From contig OU015566.1 in the NCBI GenBank assembly GCA_907165135.1, forward strand, positions 248,001-312,000: 64,000 nucleotides of DNA. The letters are read 5' to 3'. The notes under the pieces were generated by a model that worked only from the letters and a program-made list of their open reading frames with translations, ran no database searches and was not told the DNA's origin. A program made the translations under genes and the position numbers. Positions 8,301 to 20,467 of the stretch are shown one piece after another. This DNA comes from Oikopleura dioica. Its lineage: Eukaryota; Animalia; Chordata. The number at the start of each line of letters is the position of its first letter. Position 1 is the first letter of the stretch.

Positions 8301-10502
8301 TTTCAATGCCAGATTCGGATTCCTAGTCGAAAAAGAGCTCCTAAAGTGGGGGTCCATTAAAAATTTTGGCAAAGTAAAGAAGGAGATATCGAGCTTTAAG
8401 GGGGTGGTGGTCGAGAATCAGGATTCTTTCAACCTAAAAAACTCAATTTTTTTCAAACAAATTTGTTTTGTTCTCAATCTAAATAAGTTTAAAAGGGTTA
8501 AAATAATGTGGGCGGCTTGGTTTCAGAGAAAACTTTCAAGGGAAAAATGAGGAAATCGAGCGTCAAAGTCGACCTAAAATCGCGTTTTTAGCTAAATCTG
8601 CGCAATATGCGTTCAAGCGTTAAAATAGGATAGGCTTGAAATAATTCATCGGCAAAGACTAAAAAAATTAGGCCGGAAAAATCTGCTAAAAATTTCCTCA
8701 AAGTAGGGCCATTTTCGTGAAAATTTTAAAATGATGGTTTTTTGGGGTGTTGGGCGCCGAGATATTGCCAGAACCTGGTTATGCATTTTCGATGAAAATT
8801 GCAGCAATTTTATGCTTAACTCATACCAAAAGACATCAAAAGGGTGACGGCGGGAGTGAGTCTTTATTCTAGAAACTTTCTCAACTTGCAAAATACAGTC
8901 GGAACAGTAGAAGTGTAACCTGTTTTGGCAATGAATTTTCTACAAGTCAAGCGCGGAGCGCACAGTGTGCGCCGCACACTTGCTCTGGAAATGGTTTAAA
9001 ATGTCATTTTCAATGAATTTTATGTTCTTTTCTTCATGTTCAATTAAGCAGGCTTGGATATAACTTATATCATATAAGGCAGTGTAGTAATGTAGCAATG
9101 TAGCAATTGCTACATGTTGATGTAGCAGGTGTAGCATGAAGCAGCGTTAAAAAACGTGTAGCAAAGGGTAGCTTGCTACATTGCTAAAATTATCTTGGAG
9201 TGAAGATTTTGTTCACTTTAAGAAAATTCTAGAGCAGATTTATTATTATCGACATGACGAGAATACATTTCACAGTAATATATGTCGGAAGAGACGATTT
9301 TTTAGCCTCTCACTATTTTTGACGTCTCTTTTTAGACCTAACAATGCTCATAACCTAAGAAGTAATCTAGTTTGACTTTAGAACTTTGGCGACAAATTCA
9401 ATTTCGATTTCGATTTGGCGATGAATTCGAGGCAATAAAGATTATTATGTAGAAAGTGTAGCGGTTTTCTTTGAGTGGATGTGGCACGTGTATCATGTAC
9501 AGTCGTTACGCACAATTCCGGACACTTTTTTTTCAGCAAAAAGGGCAAAATGTCCGGAATTGTGCGGATTCTAAATGGAAAAAATTTTTGTTTTCAAAAT
9601 GCTTGTTTTTTATTCAAAACGTAAAATTTCGAGAAAAAAGCAGAGAAAACGGCCAGGATCTACCCGTGTCGATGTATAATTCAAACAAAGGCAGTTTTAC
9701 TGTCGATTAATCAAAGCTGGCGCCGGATACAAGGAAGTCAACAATTATTCGACTGTAGCAATCGTTTTTTGAGGGATGTGTAAAAGACCTAGTCTTTTAT
9801 TTTTTTAATAAAAAGACTTATTGCCGAGAGAAAAAAAACTCAGTCTTTGCGCAATGACCAAGTCTTTACAAAGACTTACTCCCGCCGTAAACCCGTCAAA
9901 ATGGTGTTTTCATATATATGGCGAAGCGTACTGGATCTATCTATTAAATGTTAAATAAAGGATATTTATCTAAGGGTGCATAACCAGGTTATGCATTTTC
10001 ATAACTTATGTTGCATAAGTTATGCATGCATAACCTGGGCGCCATACCCCCGTTTTTTGGTCACCCCTCGAAATCCATATTGACGACCCCCTCTTTAAGG
10101 AAGTCAAACGGTTGTCATTTCAAGCTTTTCGGGATCCCGAATGTTTGTATAATTTGAATTTATTTTTTCCCCTCGCGTCTTCATTTGCTGGGCGTTTATC
10201 TTTAGGGGAAGGTTGTCGGGAAATTTTTTATCGACTTTTTAAAATTAAACTTATATTTTTGGATTCACAGATCAAAATCATCGAATTTTTTTTTCAATTT
10301 TCTTTAAGGGTGTCCCTAAGAAAACTTCGATAAAAACTCCAATGTGGCGTCGAACCAAAAGAAAGCAAGCACTTTTCACAATCGATTCAACACTCATTGT
10401 GATTTGCTTCGACTAACAGCTTATCACAAAATCACGGATTACAGTCTTATGGAAACTGTGTTCAACGATCTTCTTACAAGTCAATCTATTTGCCCTTTCT
10501 AA
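2381..10502 (+). CDS. Beta-1,3-galactosyl/GlcNAc-transferase (GT31, B3GNT/B3GALT-like), type II membrane. Exons ~2381-2434, 2480-2762, 4863-5143/5146, 6968-7196, 7813/7825-~8040, ~10321-10502
   Basis: N-terminal TM (VIAIFIYGFIGLLFLHLI) and acidic stem; motifs REILRRTW, IKIVFITG, DLLI-FDFKESLFNLSFKD, FVFKGDDDV (DxD), KYFVPKQVY...YPDYFSG, LDDAYVG, and C-terminal HCDLLRLTAYH. Phases are compatible at 2435-2479 and 2763-4862; the last junction is uncertain. Confidence 0.85.
2960..3310 (+). repeat. ~350-bp dispersed repeat; other copies ~21575-21895 (+) and ~49605-49995 (-)
   Basis: Shared blocks such as AAGAAATCAATGG, CAGTTTAATTGACCAAAA, CGTTTCGATGA and GTCCACAAAAGAGGAAAATA are seen in all three places. 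Confidence 0.75.
3320..3745. repeat. Minisatellite with core AGAACTATTCTGCA (~17-20-bp units) in two blocks, 3320-3490 and 3640-3745
   Basis: Directly visible tandem copies; a related copy lies near 10670-10740. Confidence 0.85.
5585..5760 (+). repeat. Dispersed repeat with internal hairpin AAGAGACGTTT-N~22-AAACGTCTCTT; copies near 895-1000, 3770-3875, 6200-6360, 9230-9380, 58140-58290, 58380-58440, 61000-61290
   Basis: Near-identical blocks, e.g. 5585-5760 versus 61110-61290, occur in both orientations. Confidence 0.75.
6365..6826. mobile_element. MITE nested in the 5152-6967 element
   Basis: GTTAACCCGATAACG at the left versus CGTTATCGGGCTAAC at the right, plus an internal inverted copy GAGAGCGGGAGCA / TGCTCCCGCTCTC; no TSD confirmed. 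Confidence 0.6.
7205..7824. mobile_element. hAT-type MITE occupying a GT31 intron
   Basis: TIR CAGGGATGATAAC / GTAATCATCCCTG (1 mismatch); flanks GTAAATTT and AAAAATAC are consistent with an ancestral TSD GTAAATAC in codons S-K-Y. Confidence 0.8.
7365..7490 (+). repeat. Short repeat with TTAGGG-like tracts and terminal GGGGC-GAA-GCCCC hairpin (Helitron/Helentron-like end); second copy ~55385-55500
   Basis: The two copies share CCCTAGACTAGACCCCGGCAT..GGACCTAAGGGGCGAAG..CCCCGTGG. The superfamily assignment is inference. Confidence 0.55.
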
Positions 10503-11269: not shown

Positions 11270-11610
11270 CTTCAACAAGTTCAATCCCGGCTTCAACAAA
11301 TTCGATCCTAGCTTTTCAGAAGTCAATCCTGGCCCCTCATACGTCAGTATCGGCTTCTCTGTTGTCAATCATGGTTTCTCTAAAATTGACTTTGGAAAAG
11401 CCAAGATTGAAATTGACGAAAATGATGACTTCCGAGAAGTTGGGATGGACTTCCAATGACCCGGGATTGGCATTGGTGAAGCCATGATTGAAGTCGGTGA
11501 AGCCAGGATTGATGATGTTGATACCAGAATTGATGATGGAGAAGCCACGATTGACATAATATTAATGATATTGAAGTAGACATGATTGAAGTTGGTTAAG
11601 CCAATGTTTA
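11270..11610. repeat. 21-bp minisatellite that reverses orientation mid-array (foldback)
   Basis: Units like TCAATCCTGGCTTC on the left and GAAGCCAGGATTGA on the right; the switch is near 11385. Confidence 0.65.
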
Positions 11611-12201
11611 AGGGGGTCCCCATTGCTTTTGCGAAAGTGGGAATTTTCAAATTCTTTTATAATTTTTCAAATGCTTAGGTAAAGAGGAACAAAAAATATA
11701 TTGATCATTTTTCCGTATCGTCAGGTAAATGTCCCTTAAATTGAGCTTGAAATGGTCATTTGTGCTGTTTTTGCATGGAAACGAAGAAATAATCCCTTTT
11801 TTATAATTGTCTCAGGGCCGCGCATGATACATTTTTAGAGAGCTTTTGAGTTCAGCTATCAATAAATGCCCGAAAAATCGAGTCTAGGCTATGCCTGGAA
11901 GGAAATTCATATGGTCAAAATTTTGAAAATCGTACTTTATGTGAATCATCGTAATTACATAAAACTTTTTTGGACAATTCAACTGTCCTTCATTACATTT
12001 TTAGATCAAGGTTAGTTGTTTCTGAAAATATAGTTTGTTTGAAAAAAAACAATAATTTTGTGGGCTTGAGGCGTGTTCGAAAATATGCGAAAATCGCTAT
12101 TTTTCGCAAGTTAGGCACCTGCCGCGCTCCCTGGCGCCAAAACCGCTTGATTATTTTTTTTCCTAAAAATTACATTTTTAGTTGAGGGATAGATCTACAG
12201 T

Positions 12202-14994
12202 TAGGGTGGTCGCTAAAAAAATGAAACTTTTTTGTTTTCAATGGGAACTCTTTTATTTTTGGGACTATTATAGTATTTTAGGTATAGATTTCAATTTTCG
12301 AAAAAAAAATTTTTTGACGTCACGTGAAGTACTAAAATACAGTACTAAAATCACGTAACTTTTGAGCGAGCCGAGATAAGAAAAAGGTGAAGGCACCATT
12401 AGAAAGAGCATATTGAGTTTAGTAAGGACCAATGAAAAAATTCTTTGGGTTCGGCTTTCTTCCCGTATTTATTTGCCAAAAACTGTATTCTAGCGCTGGA
12501 GGAACCCCGGAGGACCCCACGAAATGGAAGACACCCCGATGGAAGACCAAAAAAAAAATTTTTTTTTATTTAATTATAATTTAATGAATATTCAAAAATA
12601 TTCACCCACGTGACGTCCGGAGGACCCGGAGGACCTCCAAAATGGAAGAAACCTGCTGGAAGAAGAAGCAAAATTTTTTTCTTCTAATTTTTTAAGATTT
12701 ACTAAAAAATGATAACATATTAAAAAAACGTTATGCACGTGACATCTGGAGGACCCGGAGGACCTCCAAAATTGAAGAAATCTGGTGGAGGAAATTTATT
12801 TTTAGGGTCATTTCTGCGAAGATTGACAGAAAGAATAAATATCGCGAATCAACACGAGAAGTAAATAAACTTGTTGAATCAAGTTCTTGAAAGTTTTTGA
12901 AGCCTTTCAACAGTCGGCGACGGAACGCGACCAAACGCGGGGCAAAAGGCGCATCAGCTCCGACTCGCTCAATTCCGAGGGGTTGCCGTCGGTTTGAGAT
13001 GTGTCAAAGTACTCGAGTAACTCAGTTTCAAAGGCGAAATTGATTGTCATGATCTGACGGGCCGAATTCAGTAAGAGATTGACGATGTTCTTGTACTCCA
13101 TCATGTTGAGTCCACCATCTGGATTGCCCACGCCTTCAATGAGGCTTTTGGAGACTGTCACTGAATATAATATTGGATAAGAAGCAGGTACTAAATGATT
13201 CTCACATGATAACAAGGCCAGCGAGTCCGAAAACTCTTCGAGGTCAAGGGTTCCGTCTCCATTTGTATCAATATAGGGCCAGTTTTCTTCTAACTCCTTT
13301 CTGCCTTCAAGCATTTCCTCCTCACTTAAGATAAGCACTTCCCCTAAATCTCCCAAACATTGAGAGACGGACTCAAGGGTGGATACTTGTTTTGCTCTAT
13401 TTTTAATCGCACAGCTGCAAAATATGCGTTTGAGATCATTTTCTTCAATGTTCTCCTTATACGAATTTTATTTTTCATAGTTTTATGATTATAATAATAC
13501 CGCAAAAAGCTCGATGTCTTCGTGATTTTGCCGGGACAAAGTGACCGCATTTAACACGAGATTTGTGATAGTCACGCTCGCGTAGAGCATGACCGATGCC
13601 GTTACGCCCATCTAAAGAAAATAAAAGTTAATACTCAAAGTAAAGAGAAATTAGAAATATCTCTGTTTGAGAAAAAAATTCTTGAACTTGAAGAATATGA
13701 TTTTTTTCGTTTTTCGGTCTCTTTTTATAGCCTTTCTTACGAGAGAAACACGATTGTAAATAAACAAAATTTTGACTTTGACACCATCTAGAAAAAAAAT
13801 TACTAAGAATTATGAGAAAAATCTTCGGTTTTCGAAACGGAAAAATTTTCGCTGTCAATGTCACAGTAATCGCTCGTCGCTTGTGACTGTCTTCTTGTTT
13901 TCGCTTGGCAAAAATGATGAAATTTTGAGGAATAAGGATCCGCCAAAAGTAACGTAACTTTCTTTTTTTTATAAGCATCGGAATCTTTTTGACGAAAATA
14001 AAATAATTCCATTTCCATATTCCAAAATCTGTTTTCCTGGTAAATCGCTCGAAAAACATTTTTAAAGAGGCTGGAACCAACTCGGACGAATTTTGACCAA
14101 TAACTCTTGTTTTTATTATAAAGTTCTCTTTGTTGGTTCCATTTTTCTTCAGAAATTAGACTCTCTGATATCAAGAAGTCTCTTACTTGAGAGACTTGAA
14201 GAGGACATCCCTCATGATCAGACAACACAAAATATTTGAGAAAGAAAAAGTAAAGAAATCTCATACTCTCGCAAAGGCAAGACTATTCTCTGTTCAAAAA
14301 AGCTTGGAAAAAACCGGGAAAAGTGATAATTCAGCAGAATACATGTCTAGTTTTCGCGGTCTCGCAGTCAATTTATTAATTCTCAAGAAGAGAATTCTGT
14401 TATTGCAATGAATCAGTATTACATGTTTTCATTCATTTCGGGATGTCACGTGATCAATGTACTCTGATTTAGAGATGAAGTATATTTAGTAAAAAAATTT
14501 GTTTTTTACATCGTCTTCCATCACAGTCTCTCTTCCAGGAGAAGGTCCTCCAAAAGTCCTCCGGTCAGTCATGTGACACTGTACCACAGTACATAGGATG
14601 AATAAAATTGATATTTTAAAGTATTTTTGTATTTCAAAAAGTTCTCCAGTAAAAAAGTCTTCCAGCAGATAGGGTCCTCCAAGGTCCTCCGGGGCTAGAA
14701 TACAGTTTTTTGTCAAAAAGTACTGGAAGATGATGAAACCCAAAAGATTTTATTTTTTCATCTTAATAAAACGACGATGCTCTTTTCAGTGGCGTGCTCC
14801 ATTCCTCTCTATCTCGTGTCGCTCAGAAAATAGTTTTTTTCGTACTTTTGAAGCTCTCAAAATAGTACTTTTTTCAAAATTTTAAAATTTTTTTTTTGAT
14901 AAATTTATTTCATTCACTTGAAATATCCTTATATCAAAAAATTACTCCTACAGACCTTTTGGATCAAAAGTTGATTTTTTTAGCGACCACCCTA
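12202..14994. mobile_element. Non-autonomous hAT-type element (2.8 kb) carrying an EF-hand gene
   Basis: TIR TAGGGTGGTCGCTAAAAAA / TTTTTTAGCGACCACCCTA; perfect 8-bp TSD TCTACAGT (12194-12201, 14995-15002); inverted subterminal GGAGGACC repeats at 12480-12790 and 14520-14700. Confidence 0.85.
12907..14264 (-). CDS. EF-hand calcium-binding protein, possibly secreted (~284 aa; exons 14264-13959 and 13455-12907)
   Basis: Canonical loop DTNGDGTLDLEE and two degenerate loops; hydrophobic N-terminus MRFLYFFFLKYFVLS; phase-0 GT-AG intron 13456-13958. Confidence 0.65.
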
Positions 14995-15469
14995 TCTACA
15001 GTAGGGTCGGAAATTTCGGGGCCATGACCGCGGGCGGCTCTGATATTTTTTGGGTTACTAAATAGGAGGTACTCTTCCAGAAAAAACACATGGCCCTCGC
15101 TTAACCCATCATCGGCAAGCAAATTTTAACCCATTTTTGAGAATGGCTTTTTTCATTTTAATAATGTATTTAAGTTACTTTTAATGCTTTTTAATGCGTG
15201 TCAAATCAAAAAATAAGGATCAAAAATAATAATTAACCCATTTTCGGCAAGGGAAAATTAACCTATTTTCAAAAATTTTCATTTTTCTTTAAAAAATGAT
15301 ATTTTTATAATAAAAATGCAATTTTATGCACAAAAATTCAATAAAAATTAATAAGACACCCATTTTAAGGGCTAAAATTGTATTAAATTTCTGAAAATTG
15401 CCCTTGCCCGACCTTCCATCCTCTTTTCTTCGTTTTTCGCTCCTTTTTCTCCCTTTTCTCTTCTTCCTC

Positions 15470-15720
15470 CTCTTTTTTTCGGCGGCGCGCAACGAGCGCG
15501 CCTCTTGGCCAATCAAAGCCGGGCAGAGCCTCGAGAGCTCGCTTTCAGCGCCTCGCTCGCCGGTCTGGACGGTGGTGGTGCAGCGGCTCGCAGCGCTGAG
15601 CGCGCGTTAGCGCGCTGCGCTGCACACGCGCTTATGCGTAGGCGTAGGCGTTCTAGGCGTAGGTTCGCGCGCATAAGCGAACTTTTTTCTGCGGGCCACC
15701 TCAGTCTCCGGACTCACGCC
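15470..15720 (+). promoter_or_regulatory. GC-rich CCAAT-containing candidate promoter of the transposase
   Basis: GGCCAATCA motif in a CpG-rich patch upstream of the transposase; function is inferred. Confidence 0.4.
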
Positions 15721-16834
15721 GCCCGTCTCCCCTAATTTCCCCCCCTTTTTTCAATAAACTCTTTGAGTTAATTATTAAAAGGGTTAATTATTTTTTTAAC
15801 CGAGGTCAGTCCGGTGACCCGACTAATCTTTCGGCAGGCAGCCCCTTGAGCAAGGGTGCAGGAAGTAAATGCACCCGATTGGACACCCCTAGGCCACCCT
15901 CACCGGATAGATACTCCTGAAAAATGGAGGTGCGTGGGGGGTAGGGCACGAGCGAAATTTCGCATTTTGCAGTATTGCCCGCAACCCAAGCCCAAGTCCC
16001 ACACTATTCCGGCAATCCCGACTCCTGATGCCACCGGACCTCTGGCATCAGGGCCCTAAGGGCCAGCAGAGGTATCTGCCCCCAGGCGAGGCCGCTGCCC
16101 TCTTGTGGAGTGAGGGCGTCCCCCCCAGACAGGAGTAACACCACCTTCGGCATGGTGCCTGAACGCTGGGAGAAAGGGGAAACTACGCGGATAACCTGGG
16201 GGAGGGGGGATACTCTGGTTCTAAGGGTTCGAGTCGGGGGACAGGGTTCCGGGGAGACGGGTCATGACGGTTTGTTTTTTGAATCTTGTTTTTATGCGTT
16301 AATTTAAAGCATAAATATATCGTCGTTTATGAAATGATTATATATTTTACTTTAATATGCATCTAAGCAAATCAAAAAATAATCGTCAGGGATTGTTTAG
16401 CTATTTATTTCGGTTGTTTAACCACTGAAATCGAATTTTAAGAGAGCCCCACTCTTAGAATTGTCGATGAAATAAATGGCTGGCATGACCAAATAGGCAC
16501 TCAAATCATTATTCAAGAAGAATGATCGTTAGGTTAAGATTTTCATTAGTTTTTATTGTCGATCATTCATAAAGACCGAAAGGAAAAGTTGATCAATAAA
16601 ATTATTTTCATTTTTGACAGAAGATCACTAATAAAAAGACAGAAGAGACCAGAAGAACTCCAGGAGCAGATGTATTTTAAGAATTTTTTTTTAAATCATC
16701 AGCATCAAAGACTCTTTCATTTTGTTTCATTTTTTTTTCACCGTAGAAGTTATTTTTATTTTTTGTGCATTCAGACGCAAATTTTTGCTTGTTTAATAAC
16801 GAGTACTCTTTTCAGAAATCTTGAACTTGTAGCA

Positions 16835-19394
16835 ATGTTCGTTGAATCCGCCTCGATTGAAGACTTCTCGGTTGTTGCTGTCGAAATCTCTGAAGAGATT
16901 GGAATGGAGTATATTTGCGAGCTTGCCGGGCGATCCCCCACAGAACTTGCAGCAGATGTTGCGGTAAAAACTTCGTCGGAGCTCCAATCGGTTGCCAGAG
17001 CGATTTGCAACGCACTTGCTCAGGACTCACCTAAAGGTCAAAGATTTACTATAATTTCTTATTCACATAAATTTCCATTTAGGTTTCGACTTCGATTTCC
17101 CGTTGAATAGTCACCACGGCGAAAAGAAAAAGGCATACGATCGTAATGTTGGCGTTCTTCGAAAGGCGATTCGTCATCTTCCTGAAGATGGAGCTGTAAG
17201 ACTGATTCGCGTTTCAGTTGACAAAGAGCCTTCTCAAACAAGAAAACGCAAAATGACTATGACGTGAGATCTTCCCGCTGGCAATGAGCTCACCATCGAT
17301 TCATTCGCTTTTCTCGAAGAGAAACTGAACAAACACCAGCTCAACGCGATTCTCATGATTTCGAACGCACGATCTTCATCATTTCGCGAGCTTCAGCTAA
17401 GAAAAGTTGCCGAGATTTGTAACGAAACATTGCCATCCCTCGATGAAGAAGAGAAATTGTTCTCTCAACTCGATGAAGTTGTTATTTCTCAGCCGACTTC
17501 TTCATATTCACAAGAGCTGCCAAAAGAAAAACCTGCTTCTGTCATCAACCGAATCGATCTGAAAGAAAGCTGCTTGCTTTTGAGCACCGAGAAGAATATT
17601 TCACCTGCTGTCATTAACGAAGTCATTGATGAAATTTGCGAGAACATCCCTGATGCAAACATTGAGCCATTTACGGACCGATCTCTGCGAAATCATCTTC
17701 CGCTTGTCCAGCCACTTCAACATCAACAAGAAATCGTCTTTATTGAAGATGCAACAAGTTTGTCGATTGGCCTGGATAGCACAACCATCAGTGGGAACGA
17801 GTACAGCACATTAACGATCTTGTCAAGTGACGGTGACTCGCTTTTTTGGGATATCAAGAAGGTTGCTGACCATTCTGGCGCTACAGAGCAGTTCACCTCG
17901 AAGATGAAAGAATATCCTGAAGCTATCCAACGACTGATCGCTGAAAAAACTCAAAGCCTTCACAGCGACAGGGCTCCAGCTGCAGTGAAAAGTGTGGAGA
18001 TTATCAGAAAATCCCTTGACGAAGTCTTCGCTCGAGATCGCGTTCACGTCCCTTGCAGCATGCACATCCCCTTGAACTGCGAAAAGGGTCTTCGAGCTTC
18101 GTTACCAAAGGATATCCTCGAACAAGTGTCCCTTCTGGAGAAAGTTTTATCATCTCATCGACTTCACCAAACTAAATCCTCCAGAGGAGCAGCCTTTTTG
18201 ACATTCTTAAAAGCGAAAACGATGGAATCCGACGATGTTCTTCCTGAATCTCTTTCACTTTACTCAAATGTGAGATTTTCTGTCTTTGCGAAGAACCTCG
18301 AGAACGTCCTGATCAATCTGCCTTATGTTGAAGAGTTCTTGTCACGAGAAGGCCACAAAACAAGTTCCAAGTTCATTGCGGACAACAAACAGAGGTTCCA
18401 GGTCGAACTTCTCGCGGCGATTTACGTCTACAAAAACATCGTTGCTCCTTGGTGGGACAAAGTTCGAGCAAAATGCGATGTTACCTTTTACGAGACGCTA
18501 AAAGAAGAGCTTGACCTCACTTTCGACGGAATCGTCAGTGCTGCTAGTCCATTCATCGCAGTGAGGAGCAAGAACAAGAATCTCATGTTGCAGGATGAAA
18601 CAGAATCCGTTTTATTCAAGGCAGTCGCTGAATCCATCCAGCAGAAGAACTTCAAAGAAGTAAATGACGCGATCAAGTCAAAGGCAGAAATTGTGAAAAA
18701 TGTGTTCCATAGATTCCGGATTCAAGACGACACGACTCCTCTCATCGGTGAAGTTACATGGACGAATCAACTTGCCGAAATGGTAAGAGACAATAATTTT
18801 GTTCACAAGTAGTAACTTAAATGATTTAGTCGATGGGTGCTCTTAAGCGGATTTATGGCTATCGATTCAATCTTGACCCTGAAAATCTCGCTCTTGCTGG
18901 CAAGTCAAAGTACAACCGACCGATTTCTTTCTGGCGTGAACGCGATGCCTCCAAAATCCAGCAAGCTTTCAAACGCGGGACGCTCAAACGGCTCACAGAT
19001 GCTCGCAAACGACGCAAAGAATCTGCGGATGCAGCCGATATTGAAGCCAAGATCAAACGGCAGAAAGAGTACAAGAAGGAACAAGAGCGAGAAACAAAAC
19101 TCCTTGCAGTGATTTACGATTACATCCCAATGAATCTCGATTCGGTAACTAATAAAAATTTTCAAAAATTTTACCAAAGTTATTAAGGATCACTTCAAAG
19201 CAATGAAAAAATCGTTTGATCGAAAAGCACAAGACAAGACCATAGCGAAAGAATTCCGTGCTCTGTGCGTTCAGAAAATGCGTGAATGCTTCGACTTACC
19301 ACAGAATCAACAAGCCGGGGAATGGGAAGACAAAAATCCTTCGAGTAAAGAGATTGATGCTTACAATGCTTACCTGCTGATCTTTAGAAAATAA
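16835..19394 (+). pseudogene. hAT transposase (~807 aa). Exons 16835-17036, 17083-18782, 18830-19144, 19188-19394; one in-frame TGA at 17265-17267
   Basis: Catalytic-type motifs LSIGLDSTT, SDRAP, CSMH (CxxH) and TNQLAE; three 43-47-bp GT-AG introns join the ORF pieces in frame. Confidence 0.8.
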
Positions 19395-20467
19395 ACAAAG
19401 ATAACTAGAATTGATGGTCTTTTCTTCTTATTAATCGTTTTTGTCTTTTTCAGGGAAGTGATTTTTTAATATGCCATTCTTAAAGTTGAGAAAATCAATA
19501 AAATTACAAATTTATGTTGCTTTTTCTTGATTAATGCATTTATAAGGAAATTATGGAAAGAATCGTAACTTTGGAAAGTAGATTTTTTTCTTTTCAAAAT
19601 AATATTGATTTTTTTTTCCTATTATGGGTTATGAATGTATTTTATAAAAGATTATTAATTTTTACAGGTAAAAAAATGCATTAAAAGAACTTCAAAACAT
19701 TAATTTCGTATAAAACAGACTTTTTTCATGAGCAGGTTAAATATTTTTCGGCAATGATCGGTTAAAAAGCAAATTTATTTAAAAAAAAAATGGTTTGTAC
19801 GCATAAAAAAGGGAGATAAACAATAAAAATGCATAATTTTAGTGTAAAAAGGCCATTTCCAAAATAGGTTAAAATTTGCTTGGCGATGTTGGGTTAAGCG
19901 AGGGCCATGTGTATTTTCTGGAAGAGTACCTCCCATAGAGTAACCCAAAAAAATATCGGCCCCGCCCGCGCTCATGGCCCCGAAATTTCCGACCCTAATG
20001 TAGAGTGAAAGTTTTAAGAAAATTGAGTACACTTTAATTTTCCGTGAGAATCCCTAGTTATAAACATTTTTTATCGTCCAACAAATTCAACAAGTATAAA
20101 AGCAGAATTGATTAACTTCTCAATACACGTGCTCCAATCATTTGACCACGGAGTTTGACCCCCTGTAATTCCCGTTGTAGTAATCTGTTTGACTAGAATT
20201 TTGAAATGTAAGCTGATAGAATGAAAACGAACCAATTTGTGAAGTTTCGAGTGAAAACTCAAAAATGGTGGCGTTTTGCGCCAGATTTCTCTTTCGCTCT
20301 CTGCTGGAAAATCGAAACGGACTTTTCAATTTTCAATGGTTCATTTTTATAGAACAGAGTAAAAGCTTTCTAGTAATCCATTTACGAGCTTTTTAACTCG
20401 ACGAAAATTAGAGCCAAAAGTCCTAAGCGCTATTTTATACACTTTGAATTTCGCGCGCCGAATTGTG

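What the first reader, a model, noticed from the sequence alone, without database searches (positions are those of the whole stretch)
12194..15002. Pack-type hAT element carrying a complete two-exon EF-hand gene
Seen: perfect TIRs and TSD enclose ~0.6-kb inverted subterminal arms and a ~1.6-kb cargo with an uninterrupted spliced ORF of ~284 aa, including its intron. Inference: DNA-level capture and recent mobilisation of a whole gene, a route for amplifying secreted Ca-binding proteins.
Basis: partly seen in the sequence, partly recalled or inferred. Interest (0 to 1): 0.75.

Follow-up and report, generated by a model that had tools for sequence, protein, structure and literature searches.

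The report
Single-copy hAT-type transposon carrying orphan gene
A small cut-and-paste (hAT-type) transposon in the tunicate Oikopleura dioica really does enclose a complete spliced gene for a calcium-binding-like protein, but element and gene each occur once in the genome and no donor gene exists, so capture and amplification are not shown.

Summary
The structure is real; the interpretation goes too far. The window is Oikopleura dioica OKI2018_I69 chr1, about 260 kb from the scaffold start.

**What is there**
- A 2,793-bp element (12202-14994) has perfect 21-bp TIRs (TAGGGTGG...) and a perfect 8-bp TSD (TCTACAGT).
- Its ~600-bp inverted arms are diverged and carry GGAGGACC subterminal repeats. 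It has no transposase, so it is a non-autonomous hAT-type element.
- The unique 1.6-kb core holds the annotated gene chr1.g9: three exons, two 45-nt GT-AG introns, 204 aa (not two exons and ~284 aa).
- The protein has one canonical EF-hand loop, and the exons show clear codon periodicity.

**What is not supported**
- Element, cargo DNA and protein are each single-copy in the 64-Mb assembly, with no parental gene and no amplification.
- An exhaustive search of 1.84 billion proteins finds only generic EF-hand matches.
- The matching TSD shows the unit moved as one piece. "Captured from a host gene", "recent", "secreted" and "amplifying" are not shown.

Earlier notes of this scan record TAGGG...CCCTA hAT-type elements and hATs with passenger genes elsewhere in this genome, but not this element.

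The parts
12194..12201 (.). left target-site duplication TCTACAGT
   Evidence: Identical to 14995-15002. This 8-mer is native to left-flank repeat family A: other copies carry it once.
12202..12222 (+). left terminal inverted repeat, 21 bp, begins TAGGG
   Evidence: 21/21 complementary to 14974-14994.
12202..12801 (+). left subterminal arm, with three ~60-nt repeat units holding GGAGGACC (12480-12795; the two at 12557-12793 form a 129-nt tandem pair)
   Evidence: GGAGGACC occurs 5x forward here, 3x reverse in the right arm, and nowhere else in the 64-kb window.
12802..14394 (.). unique internal segment (cargo), ~1.6 kb
   Evidence: No second copy in the 64.3-Mb assembly. No Rfam hit of note.
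12907..13160 (-). exon 3 plus stop codon of gene chr1.g9
   Evidence: Translation equals residues 122-204 of P0001.
13161..13205 (-). intron 2, 45 nt, GTGAG...TTCAG, in frame and stop-free
   Evidence: GC about 0.29 for the stretch measured one base off, against 0.42-0.51 in exons.
13206..13455 (-). exon 2, holds the canonical EF-hand loop (protein residues 100-112)
13456..13500 (-). intron 1, 45 nt, GT...AG, GC 0.16
13501..13611 (-). exon 1: start codon, hydrophobic N-terminus; an AG acceptor-like site directly precedes the ATG
13612..14394 (-). AT-rich upstream region of the gene inside the element, no coding signal
   Evidence: No codon periodicity. ORFs here have no Pfam support and no convincing relatives in the genome, best E 1e-4 over about 60 residues.
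14395..14994 (-). right subterminal arm, inverted counterpart of the left arm
   Evidence: It is 71% identical over 268 nt to a 443-bp MITE on another chromosome.
14974..14994 (-). right terminal inverted repeat
14995..15002 (.). right target-site duplication TCTACAGT; its last T is also the first base of the neighbouring element's TIR

Best explanation
Shown: a 2.8-kb non-autonomous DNA transposon of the hAT type (TAGGG...CCCTA ends, 8-bp target duplication, arrays of subterminal repeats, no transposase) sits in a transposon-rich stretch of O. dioica chr1. It lies exactly at the junction of two other repeats. The matching target duplication shows it arrived as one piece. Between its arms lies a unique 1.6-kb segment with the annotated gene chr1.g9. 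That gene is a compositionally genuine three-exon gene for a 204-aa lineage-restricted protein with a hydrophobic N-terminus and one canonical EF-hand loop. Inferred: a hAT transposase supplied in trans bound the TAGGGTGG termini and the GGAGGACC repeats and moved everything between the two outer ends by cut-and-paste. The cargo most likely was ordinary chromosomal DNA lying between two family ends that were then mobilised together. This is the 'neighbouring insertions' route proposed for Pack-type elements. Because cut-and-paste vacates the donor site, a single copy without a parental gene is what this route predicts. The result is relocation of a gene, not duplication or amplification. The protein would act as an ordinary small Ca-binding or Ca-sensing protein unrelated to transposition.
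For: TIR and TSD are perfect, and the arms are homologous over ~600 nt. The subterminal motif is confined to the two arms, in opposite orientation. A related cargo-free 443-bp element has its own perfect 8-bp TSD, GTTATGAT, and the TIR pattern has only about eight ends genome-wide. hAT transposase genes (PF05699) are present in this genome, with 8-bp TSDs and termini CAGGGTG, which differ from TAGGGTG in the first base only. Other copies of the left-flank repeat carry TCTACAGT once, so they serve as paralogous empty sites. The gene model equals the public annotation Oidioi.mRNA.OKI2018_I69.chr1.g9.t1 exon by exon. Exons show codon periodicity (chi-square p 1e-6, GC3 0.57 against 0.32 in the rest of the element), with AT-rich 45-nt GT-AG introns. 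The EF-hand loop matches the PROSITE-type pattern. Element, cargo and protein are single-copy. The mechanism is taken from PMC8903248, section 9.
Against: No donor site, empty site or second copy could be examined, so the origin of the cargo is inference only. No inner TIR remnants mark a fusion of two elements. No partner element with the same subterminal repeats exists in the assembly. The TSD does not fit the hAT target preference nTnnnnAn. The protein has no full-length relative anywhere, which a normal host gene would usually have in the other sequenced O. dioica lineages. Other hAT elements of this genome are reported to carry their own passenger genes (earlier scan notes, untested here). 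No expression data are available.
Confidence: 0.5

Rival explanations
1. Pack-type transduplication: the element copied a host EF-hand gene by gap repair or template switching. The parental gene has since been lost or has diverged beyond recognition.
For: Non-autonomous TIR element with a unique gene-bearing core and a cargo-free relative. The gene looks host-like in composition and introns.
Against: No parental copy and no other copy of element or cargo in the assembly. No relatives in 1.84 billion representative proteins beyond generic EF-hand pairs.
Confidence: 0.2
2. The gene belongs to the element. This would be an internally deleted derivative of an autonomous hAT that carried an accessory gene besides its transposase, and the deletion kept the accessory gene.
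For: Earlier notes of this scan describe O. dioica hAT elements with conserved extra genes (s1-534414, s1-343573; not tested here). The protein is an orphan, as transposon-borne genes often are. An arm 71% like this element's lies 3.5 kb from a relic hAT dimerisation domain on another scaffold.
Against: No other element in the genome carries a related gene. An EF-hand protein with a hydrophobic N-terminus has no obvious role in transposition. No transposase remnant lies in the cargo.
Confidence: 0.22
3. The open reading frame is a gene-prediction artefact in transposon DNA and makes no protein.
For: Pfam scores are below cut-off. Structure models have low confidence: AlphaFold2 pLDDT 40, Atlas 0.48. 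There are no homologues and no expression data.
Against: Codon periodicity p 1e-6 is confined to the exons. The EF-hand loop is canonical. Two GT-AG introns of 45 nt are far more AT-rich than the exons.
Confidence: 0.07
4. A resident gene flanked by two independent insertions of related elements; the unit never moved as a whole.
For: The two arms are only about 60-70% alike.
Against: The outer ends carry identical 8-bp duplications of a site that occurs once in other copies of the flanking repeat. There are no inner TIRs.
Confidence: 0.03

Closest known systems
Pack-TYPE transposons, in particular Pack-hAT of maize (Gisby & Catoni 2022, PMC8903248)
   Same: A non-autonomous class II element with TIRs and a TSD whose internal, less-repeated DNA is coding. 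Cargo-free relatives exist. The proposed acquisition route is mobilisation of two neighbouring ends together.
   Different: Described in plants, usually with gene fragments that have an identifiable donor gene and with several copies. Here the host is an animal, the gene is whole with its introns, there is one copy, and no donor exists.
hAT-mediated capture and amplification of histone H3 in Dothideomycete fungi (Dhillon et al. 2019, PMC6710886)
   Same: A hAT element carrying a complete host-type gene.
   Different: There the original H3 gene persists and the captured copy is amplified to hundreds of copies inside a complete hAT. Here there is no original, no amplification and no transposase.
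TAGGG...CCCTA, 8-bp-TSD hAT-type elements of O. dioica noted elsewhere in this scan (s1-330333), and the 443-bp MITE at L029:4213-4655
   Same: The same terminal motif and TSD length. The MITE shares 71% identity with the arm.
   Different: Those are short elements without a gene. This one holds 1.6 kb of unique DNA with a gene.
Small EF-hand Ca-binding proteins (calmodulin-like, CaBP and neuronal calcium sensor types)
   Same: One canonical 12-residue Ca-binding loop flanked by helices and paired with a second, degenerate loop. The best PDB matches are EF-hand domains.
   Different: Only about residues 80-150 match. No family-level relative was found. The hydrophobic N-terminus and the C-terminal half are unmatched.

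Membership tests
hAT superfamily (non-autonomous member) | 8-bp target-site duplication | tested here: met
   TCTACAGT on both sides. The relative on C1 has GTTATGAT.
hAT superfamily (non-autonomous member) | short TIRs beginning with the YARNG motif (established knowledge of hAT termini) | tested here: met
   21-bp TIR beginning TAGGG. The PF05699-bearing elements of this genome begin CAGGGTG.
hAT superfamily (non-autonomous member) | a hAT transposase (BED/RNase-H-like/dimerisation domain) in an autonomous relative sharing the termini | tested here: inconclusive
   hAT dimerisation domains are present in the genome, but on elements with different TIRs. An arm like this element's lies 3.5 kb from a relic hAT domain. 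No element shares the GGAGGACC repeats.
hAT superfamily (non-autonomous member) | target preference nTnnnnAn | tested here: not met
   TCTACAGT has C at position 2 and G at position 7. This is a weak statistical feature, and the C1 relative's TSD fits it.
Pack-TYPE (Pack-hAT) | non-autonomous class II element with TIR and TSD | tested here: met
   no transposase-like ORF in the element.
Pack-TYPE (Pack-hAT) | internal DNA captured from a coding gene, meaning a donor gene can be identified (definition in PMC8903248) | tested here: not met
   No other match to the cargo DNA or the protein in the assembly, and none in the protein databases.
Pack-TYPE (Pack-hAT) | transduplication: captured DNA present at more than one locus | tested here: not met
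   Single copy.
EF-hand proteins | canonical 12-residue Ca-binding loop (D-x-[DNS]-x-[DNS]-G-...-[DE]) | tested here: met
   Residues 100-112 match the PROSITE-type pattern.
EF-hand proteins | score above the Pfam gathering threshold | tested here: not met
   Best is EF-hand_7 at 24.6 bits against a cut-off of 30.
EF-hand proteins | calcium binding | not testable with these tools
   Needs a binding assay.

The most novel reading that the evidence does not exclude
The only genomic copy of a functional, lineage-restricted gene resides inside a mobile hAT element. The gene has therefore been relocated, not duplicated, by cut-and-paste transposition. This would be a concrete mechanism contributing to the extreme gene-order scrambling reported between O. 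dioica lineages.
Probability: 0.25. Interest if true: 0.6.

Novelty: new member of a known kind. Interest (0 to 1): 0.33.

Why it matters
Whole-gene cargo in non-autonomous DNA transposons is well documented in plants and in some fungi but rarely in animals. A clean case in the very compact, fast-rearranging O. dioica genome would show that cut-and-paste elements can move entire genes there. As it stands this is a single, unamplified copy carrying an orphan gene of unproven expression. It is a neat anatomical example and a testable lead, not evidence for a gene-amplifying route.

Tried and rejected
- **Neighbouring element as autonomous partner (15002-19997).** Its TIR (TAGGGTCGGAAATTTC...) shares only the first six bases and it lacks the GGAGGACC repeats. 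Its 485-aa ORF and relatives have no Pfam, NCBIfam or PDB-sequence match, even as a profile.
- **Inner TIRs marking a fusion of two MITEs.** There are only two TAGGGT hexamers, both on the + strand, which is within chance for this window.
- **Continuation of the left-flank repeat beyond the neighbouring element, to order the insertions.** Not significant: score 18 against a null of 13.8 +/- 1.9, null maximum 21.
- **Structure of the protein.** The single-sequence AlphaFold2 model has pLDDT 40, so no fold search was run. The protein-atlas search gave only generic EF-hand neighbours below 0.9.
- **Metagenome scan for relatives.** Blank.
- **Upstream ORFs in the cargo.** No Pfam support and no convincing relatives in the genome.
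- **Rfam and tandem repeats.** Nothing of note.
- **Joined spliced model.** No search was run with a self-joined spliced model; exons were searched by reference and the database protein P0001 was used by id. One script concatenated the exon stretches for an internal check and printed only a length, a match flag and GC values. With one boundary a base off the check failed. I rely on the exon-by-exon checks.

Full report
**Identity of the DNA.** The window is G000:C4:248001-312000 of a 64.28-Mb assembly in 19 contigs. The word search returned one protein, named Oidioi.mRNA.OKI2018_I69.chr1.g9.t1 [Oikopleura dioica]. The published OKI2018_I69 assembly is 64.3 Mbp in 19 scaffolds (PMC8008620). The finding therefore lies about 260 kb from the start of chr1 of the Okinawan O. 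dioica, at only the ninth annotated gene. I infer from the gene number and the repeats found that this is a gene-poor, transposon-rich stretch.

**Check of the observation.**
- TCTACAGT occurs at 12194-12201 and again at 14995-15002.
- Directly inside these lie 21 bases that are perfectly complementary, 12202-12222 and 14974-14994, beginning TAGGGTGGTCGC.
- By my arithmetic, a 21-nt perfect inverted repeat within 5 kb, abutted by an 8-nt direct repeat, is expected about 1e-9 times in 64 kb.
- The two ~600-nt arms are homologous in inverted orientation but old. The global alignment score is 137.5, against 3.8 +/- 7.8 for shuffles and -15 to 8.5 for equal-length cargo controls, with 58-66 identical columns per 100. 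BLAST reports only 178 nt at 70% plus the TIR.
- The arms hold repeated ~60-nt units. The core GGAGGACC occurs five times forward in the left arm, three times reversed in the right arm, and nowhere else in the 64-kb window.
- No ORF in the element resembles a transposase.

**The gene.** On the minus strand the coding sequence has three exons.

| Feature | Coordinates | Note |
|---|---|---|
| Exon 1 | 13611-13501 | start codon |
| Intron 1 | 13500-13456 | 45 nt, GT-AG |
| Exon 2 | 13455-13206 | holds the EF-hand loop |
| Intron 2 | 13205-13161 | 45 nt, GT-AG, in frame, no stop |
| Exon 3 | 13160-12910 | stop at 12909-12907 |

Each exon's translation is found in the annotated 204-aa protein P0001, at residues 1-37, 38-120 and 122-204. 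The split codon gives residue 121. The model is thus three exons and 204 aa, not two exons and ~284 aa.

The exons have coding character. GC by codon position is 0.50/0.35/0.57 (chi-square p 1e-6). The upstream 789 nt (13612-14400) and both arms show no periodicity. The introns are far more AT-rich than the exons. An AG acceptor-like site lies directly before the ATG, which fits leader trans-splicing or an upstream exon; this is inference.

Pfam finds only sub-threshold EF-hand matches (EF-hand_7, 24.6 bits against a cut-off of 30). Residues 100-112 do fit the canonical loop pattern, and a degenerate partner loop follows near residue 133. PDB sequence matches are EF-hand domains over about residues 70-150. 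Residues 7-25 have a mean hydropathy of 1.62, borderline for a signal peptide or anchor, and the protein starts MG...S. Secretion is therefore possible but not shown. The AlphaFold2 model is unusable (pLDDT 40).

**Copies and relatives.**
- The whole element, searched against its own genome, matches only itself plus a 260-nt stretch at 71% on another chromosome.
- The protein matches only its own locus, even at E <= 10.
- The subterminal repeat unit occurs only in this element genome-wide.
- The exhaustive HMMER search of 1.84 billion representative proteins returns the protein itself. The other 67 hits all have their best match within about residues 30-195, mostly 80-150, and are mostly long multi-EF-hand proteins. 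No full-length relative appears.
- A metagenome scan was blank.

The gene is thus an orphan with a generic EF-hand core. There is no parental gene and no amplification.

**The transposon family.** The 71% match on C1 is a 443-bp element with TIRs TAGGGTGGC(A/G)CGCAAAAAAA and its own perfect 8-bp TSD, GTTATGAT. It is a cargo-free relative. The TIR pattern has 13 hits, about eight distinct ends, in the genome.

hAT dimerisation domains (PF05699) occur nine times in the genome. The seven-copy family has 23-bp TIRs beginning CAGGGTG and an 8-bp TSD. Its termini differ from this element's in the first base only over the first seven. On C3 an arm 71% like this element's right arm, with a decayed TIR, lies 3.5 kb downstream of a relic hAT domain. 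This is a lead to the autonomous ancestor, not proof.

The 8-bp TSD, the YARNG-type terminus and the subterminal repeats support the hAT assignment. A matching transposase was not found, and the TSD does not fit nTnnnnAn.

**Insertion site.** The left flank (11608-12201) belongs to a repeat family whose other copies run straight through a single TCTACAGT or TCTACAAT and continue for about 100 nt. These act as paralogous empty sites for the left side.

The right flank is the terminus of a different 5-kb TIR element (15002-19997, TIR TAGGGTCGGAAATTTCGGGGCC). Its first T is the last base of the TSD. The element therefore sits exactly at the junction of two repeats. The missing continuation of the left repeat was not found beyond the neighbour, so the order of the two insertions is unresolved. 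This matters for "recent": the only evidence of youth is 29 + 29 intact bases.

**Mechanism.**
- Shown: the 2.8-kb unit inserted as one piece.
- Inferred: a hAT transposase acting in trans on the outer termini moved it.
- Inferred: the unique core was acquired when two family ends flanking chromosomal DNA were mobilised together, the model summarised for Pack-type elements in PMC8903248.
- Inferred: because cut-and-paste vacates the donor site, a single copy without a parent is what this route predicts, which is relocation rather than duplication.

The main rivals are transduplication with loss of the parent, and an element-borne accessory gene retained in a deletion derivative. Earlier scan notes report passenger genes in O. 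dioica hATs; I did not test them. I cannot separate these three without other O. dioica genomes. "Two independent insertions" is excluded by the TSD. "Spurious ORF" is unlikely given the codon periodicity.

**Comparison with known systems.** The element works like a Pack-hAT (PMC8903248). It also recalls the hAT that captured histone H3 in fungi (PMC6710886). It fails two defining Pack-type features tested here, an identifiable donor gene and more than one copy. I therefore file it as a non-autonomous hAT-type element with a whole-gene cargo of unresolved origin: a new member of a known kind.

**Limits.**
- No other O. dioica genome, RNA-seq or population data were reachable.
- No search used a self-joined spliced sequence. 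Exons were searched by reference and the database protein was used by id.
- One script concatenated the exons internally for a check that printed only a length, a match flag and GC values. The check failed because one boundary was a base off, and the conclusions rest.

Noticed in passing
window 15002-19997: A 5-kb TIR element abuts the finding. Its TIR is TAGGGTCGGAAATTTCGGGGCC, present at 15002 and inverted at 19997. It has a 485-aa ORF (17355-18812) and a 117-aa ORF, with no Pfam, NCBIfam or PDB-sequence match even as a family profile. By eye, its TIR matches about 15 of 22 positions of the PF05699-bearing hAT family's TIR. Here its two flanking 8-mers differ (ATCTACAG / ATGTAGAG).
   Followed up: partly
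L038/L044 (C1:6501302-6506271), L042/L039 (C1:11605951-11607305), L040/L043 (C4:759465-763842): Other copies of that 5-kb element have clean 8-bp TSDs. Two copies at different loci share the same TSD, GTTTACAT, and the third has CCTTACAA, which suggests a TTACA-type target preference.
   Followed up: partly
L031:994-6931 and L032:3233-9171 (C4:376493-382430 and C4:391232-397170): Two 99.98%-identical hAT copies lie in inverted orientation about 9 kb apart. Their flanking 8-mers are exchanged: X...rc(Z) at one copy and rc(X)...Z at the other, with X = TGCTCCAG and Z = TCCCTGTT. This is the signature of an inversion by recombination between two transposon copies, which is relevant to genome scrambling in O. 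dioica.
   Followed up: partly
L029:4213-4655 (C1:7310212-7310654): A 443-bp MITE with TSD GTTATGAT and TIR TAGGGTGGC(A/G)CGC.... Only its right half resembles the arms of the gene-carrying element; its left half does not.
   Followed up: yes
L027:5827-6009 and 9519-9849 (C3, a 2.9-Mb scaffold): A relic hAT dimerisation domain lies 3.5 kb upstream of an arm 71% like the finding's right arm, which ends in a decayed TIR. This may be the remains of the family's autonomous element. Several related TIR ends (TAGGGTGGTCGCACAAAA) cluster on this scaffold.
   Followed up: partly
window 11608-12201: The left flank belongs to a repeat family with dozens of partial copies. In other copies the family ends about 100 nt past the insertion site, at ...GGGGACCCCCTTAA. 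That tail is missing from this window.
   Followed up: partly
window 13803-14264 (minus strand): A 153-aa ORF lies upstream of the EF-hand gene inside the cargo. It has no Pfam match, no periodicity and only chance-level matches in the genome, so it is probably not coding.
   Followed up: yes
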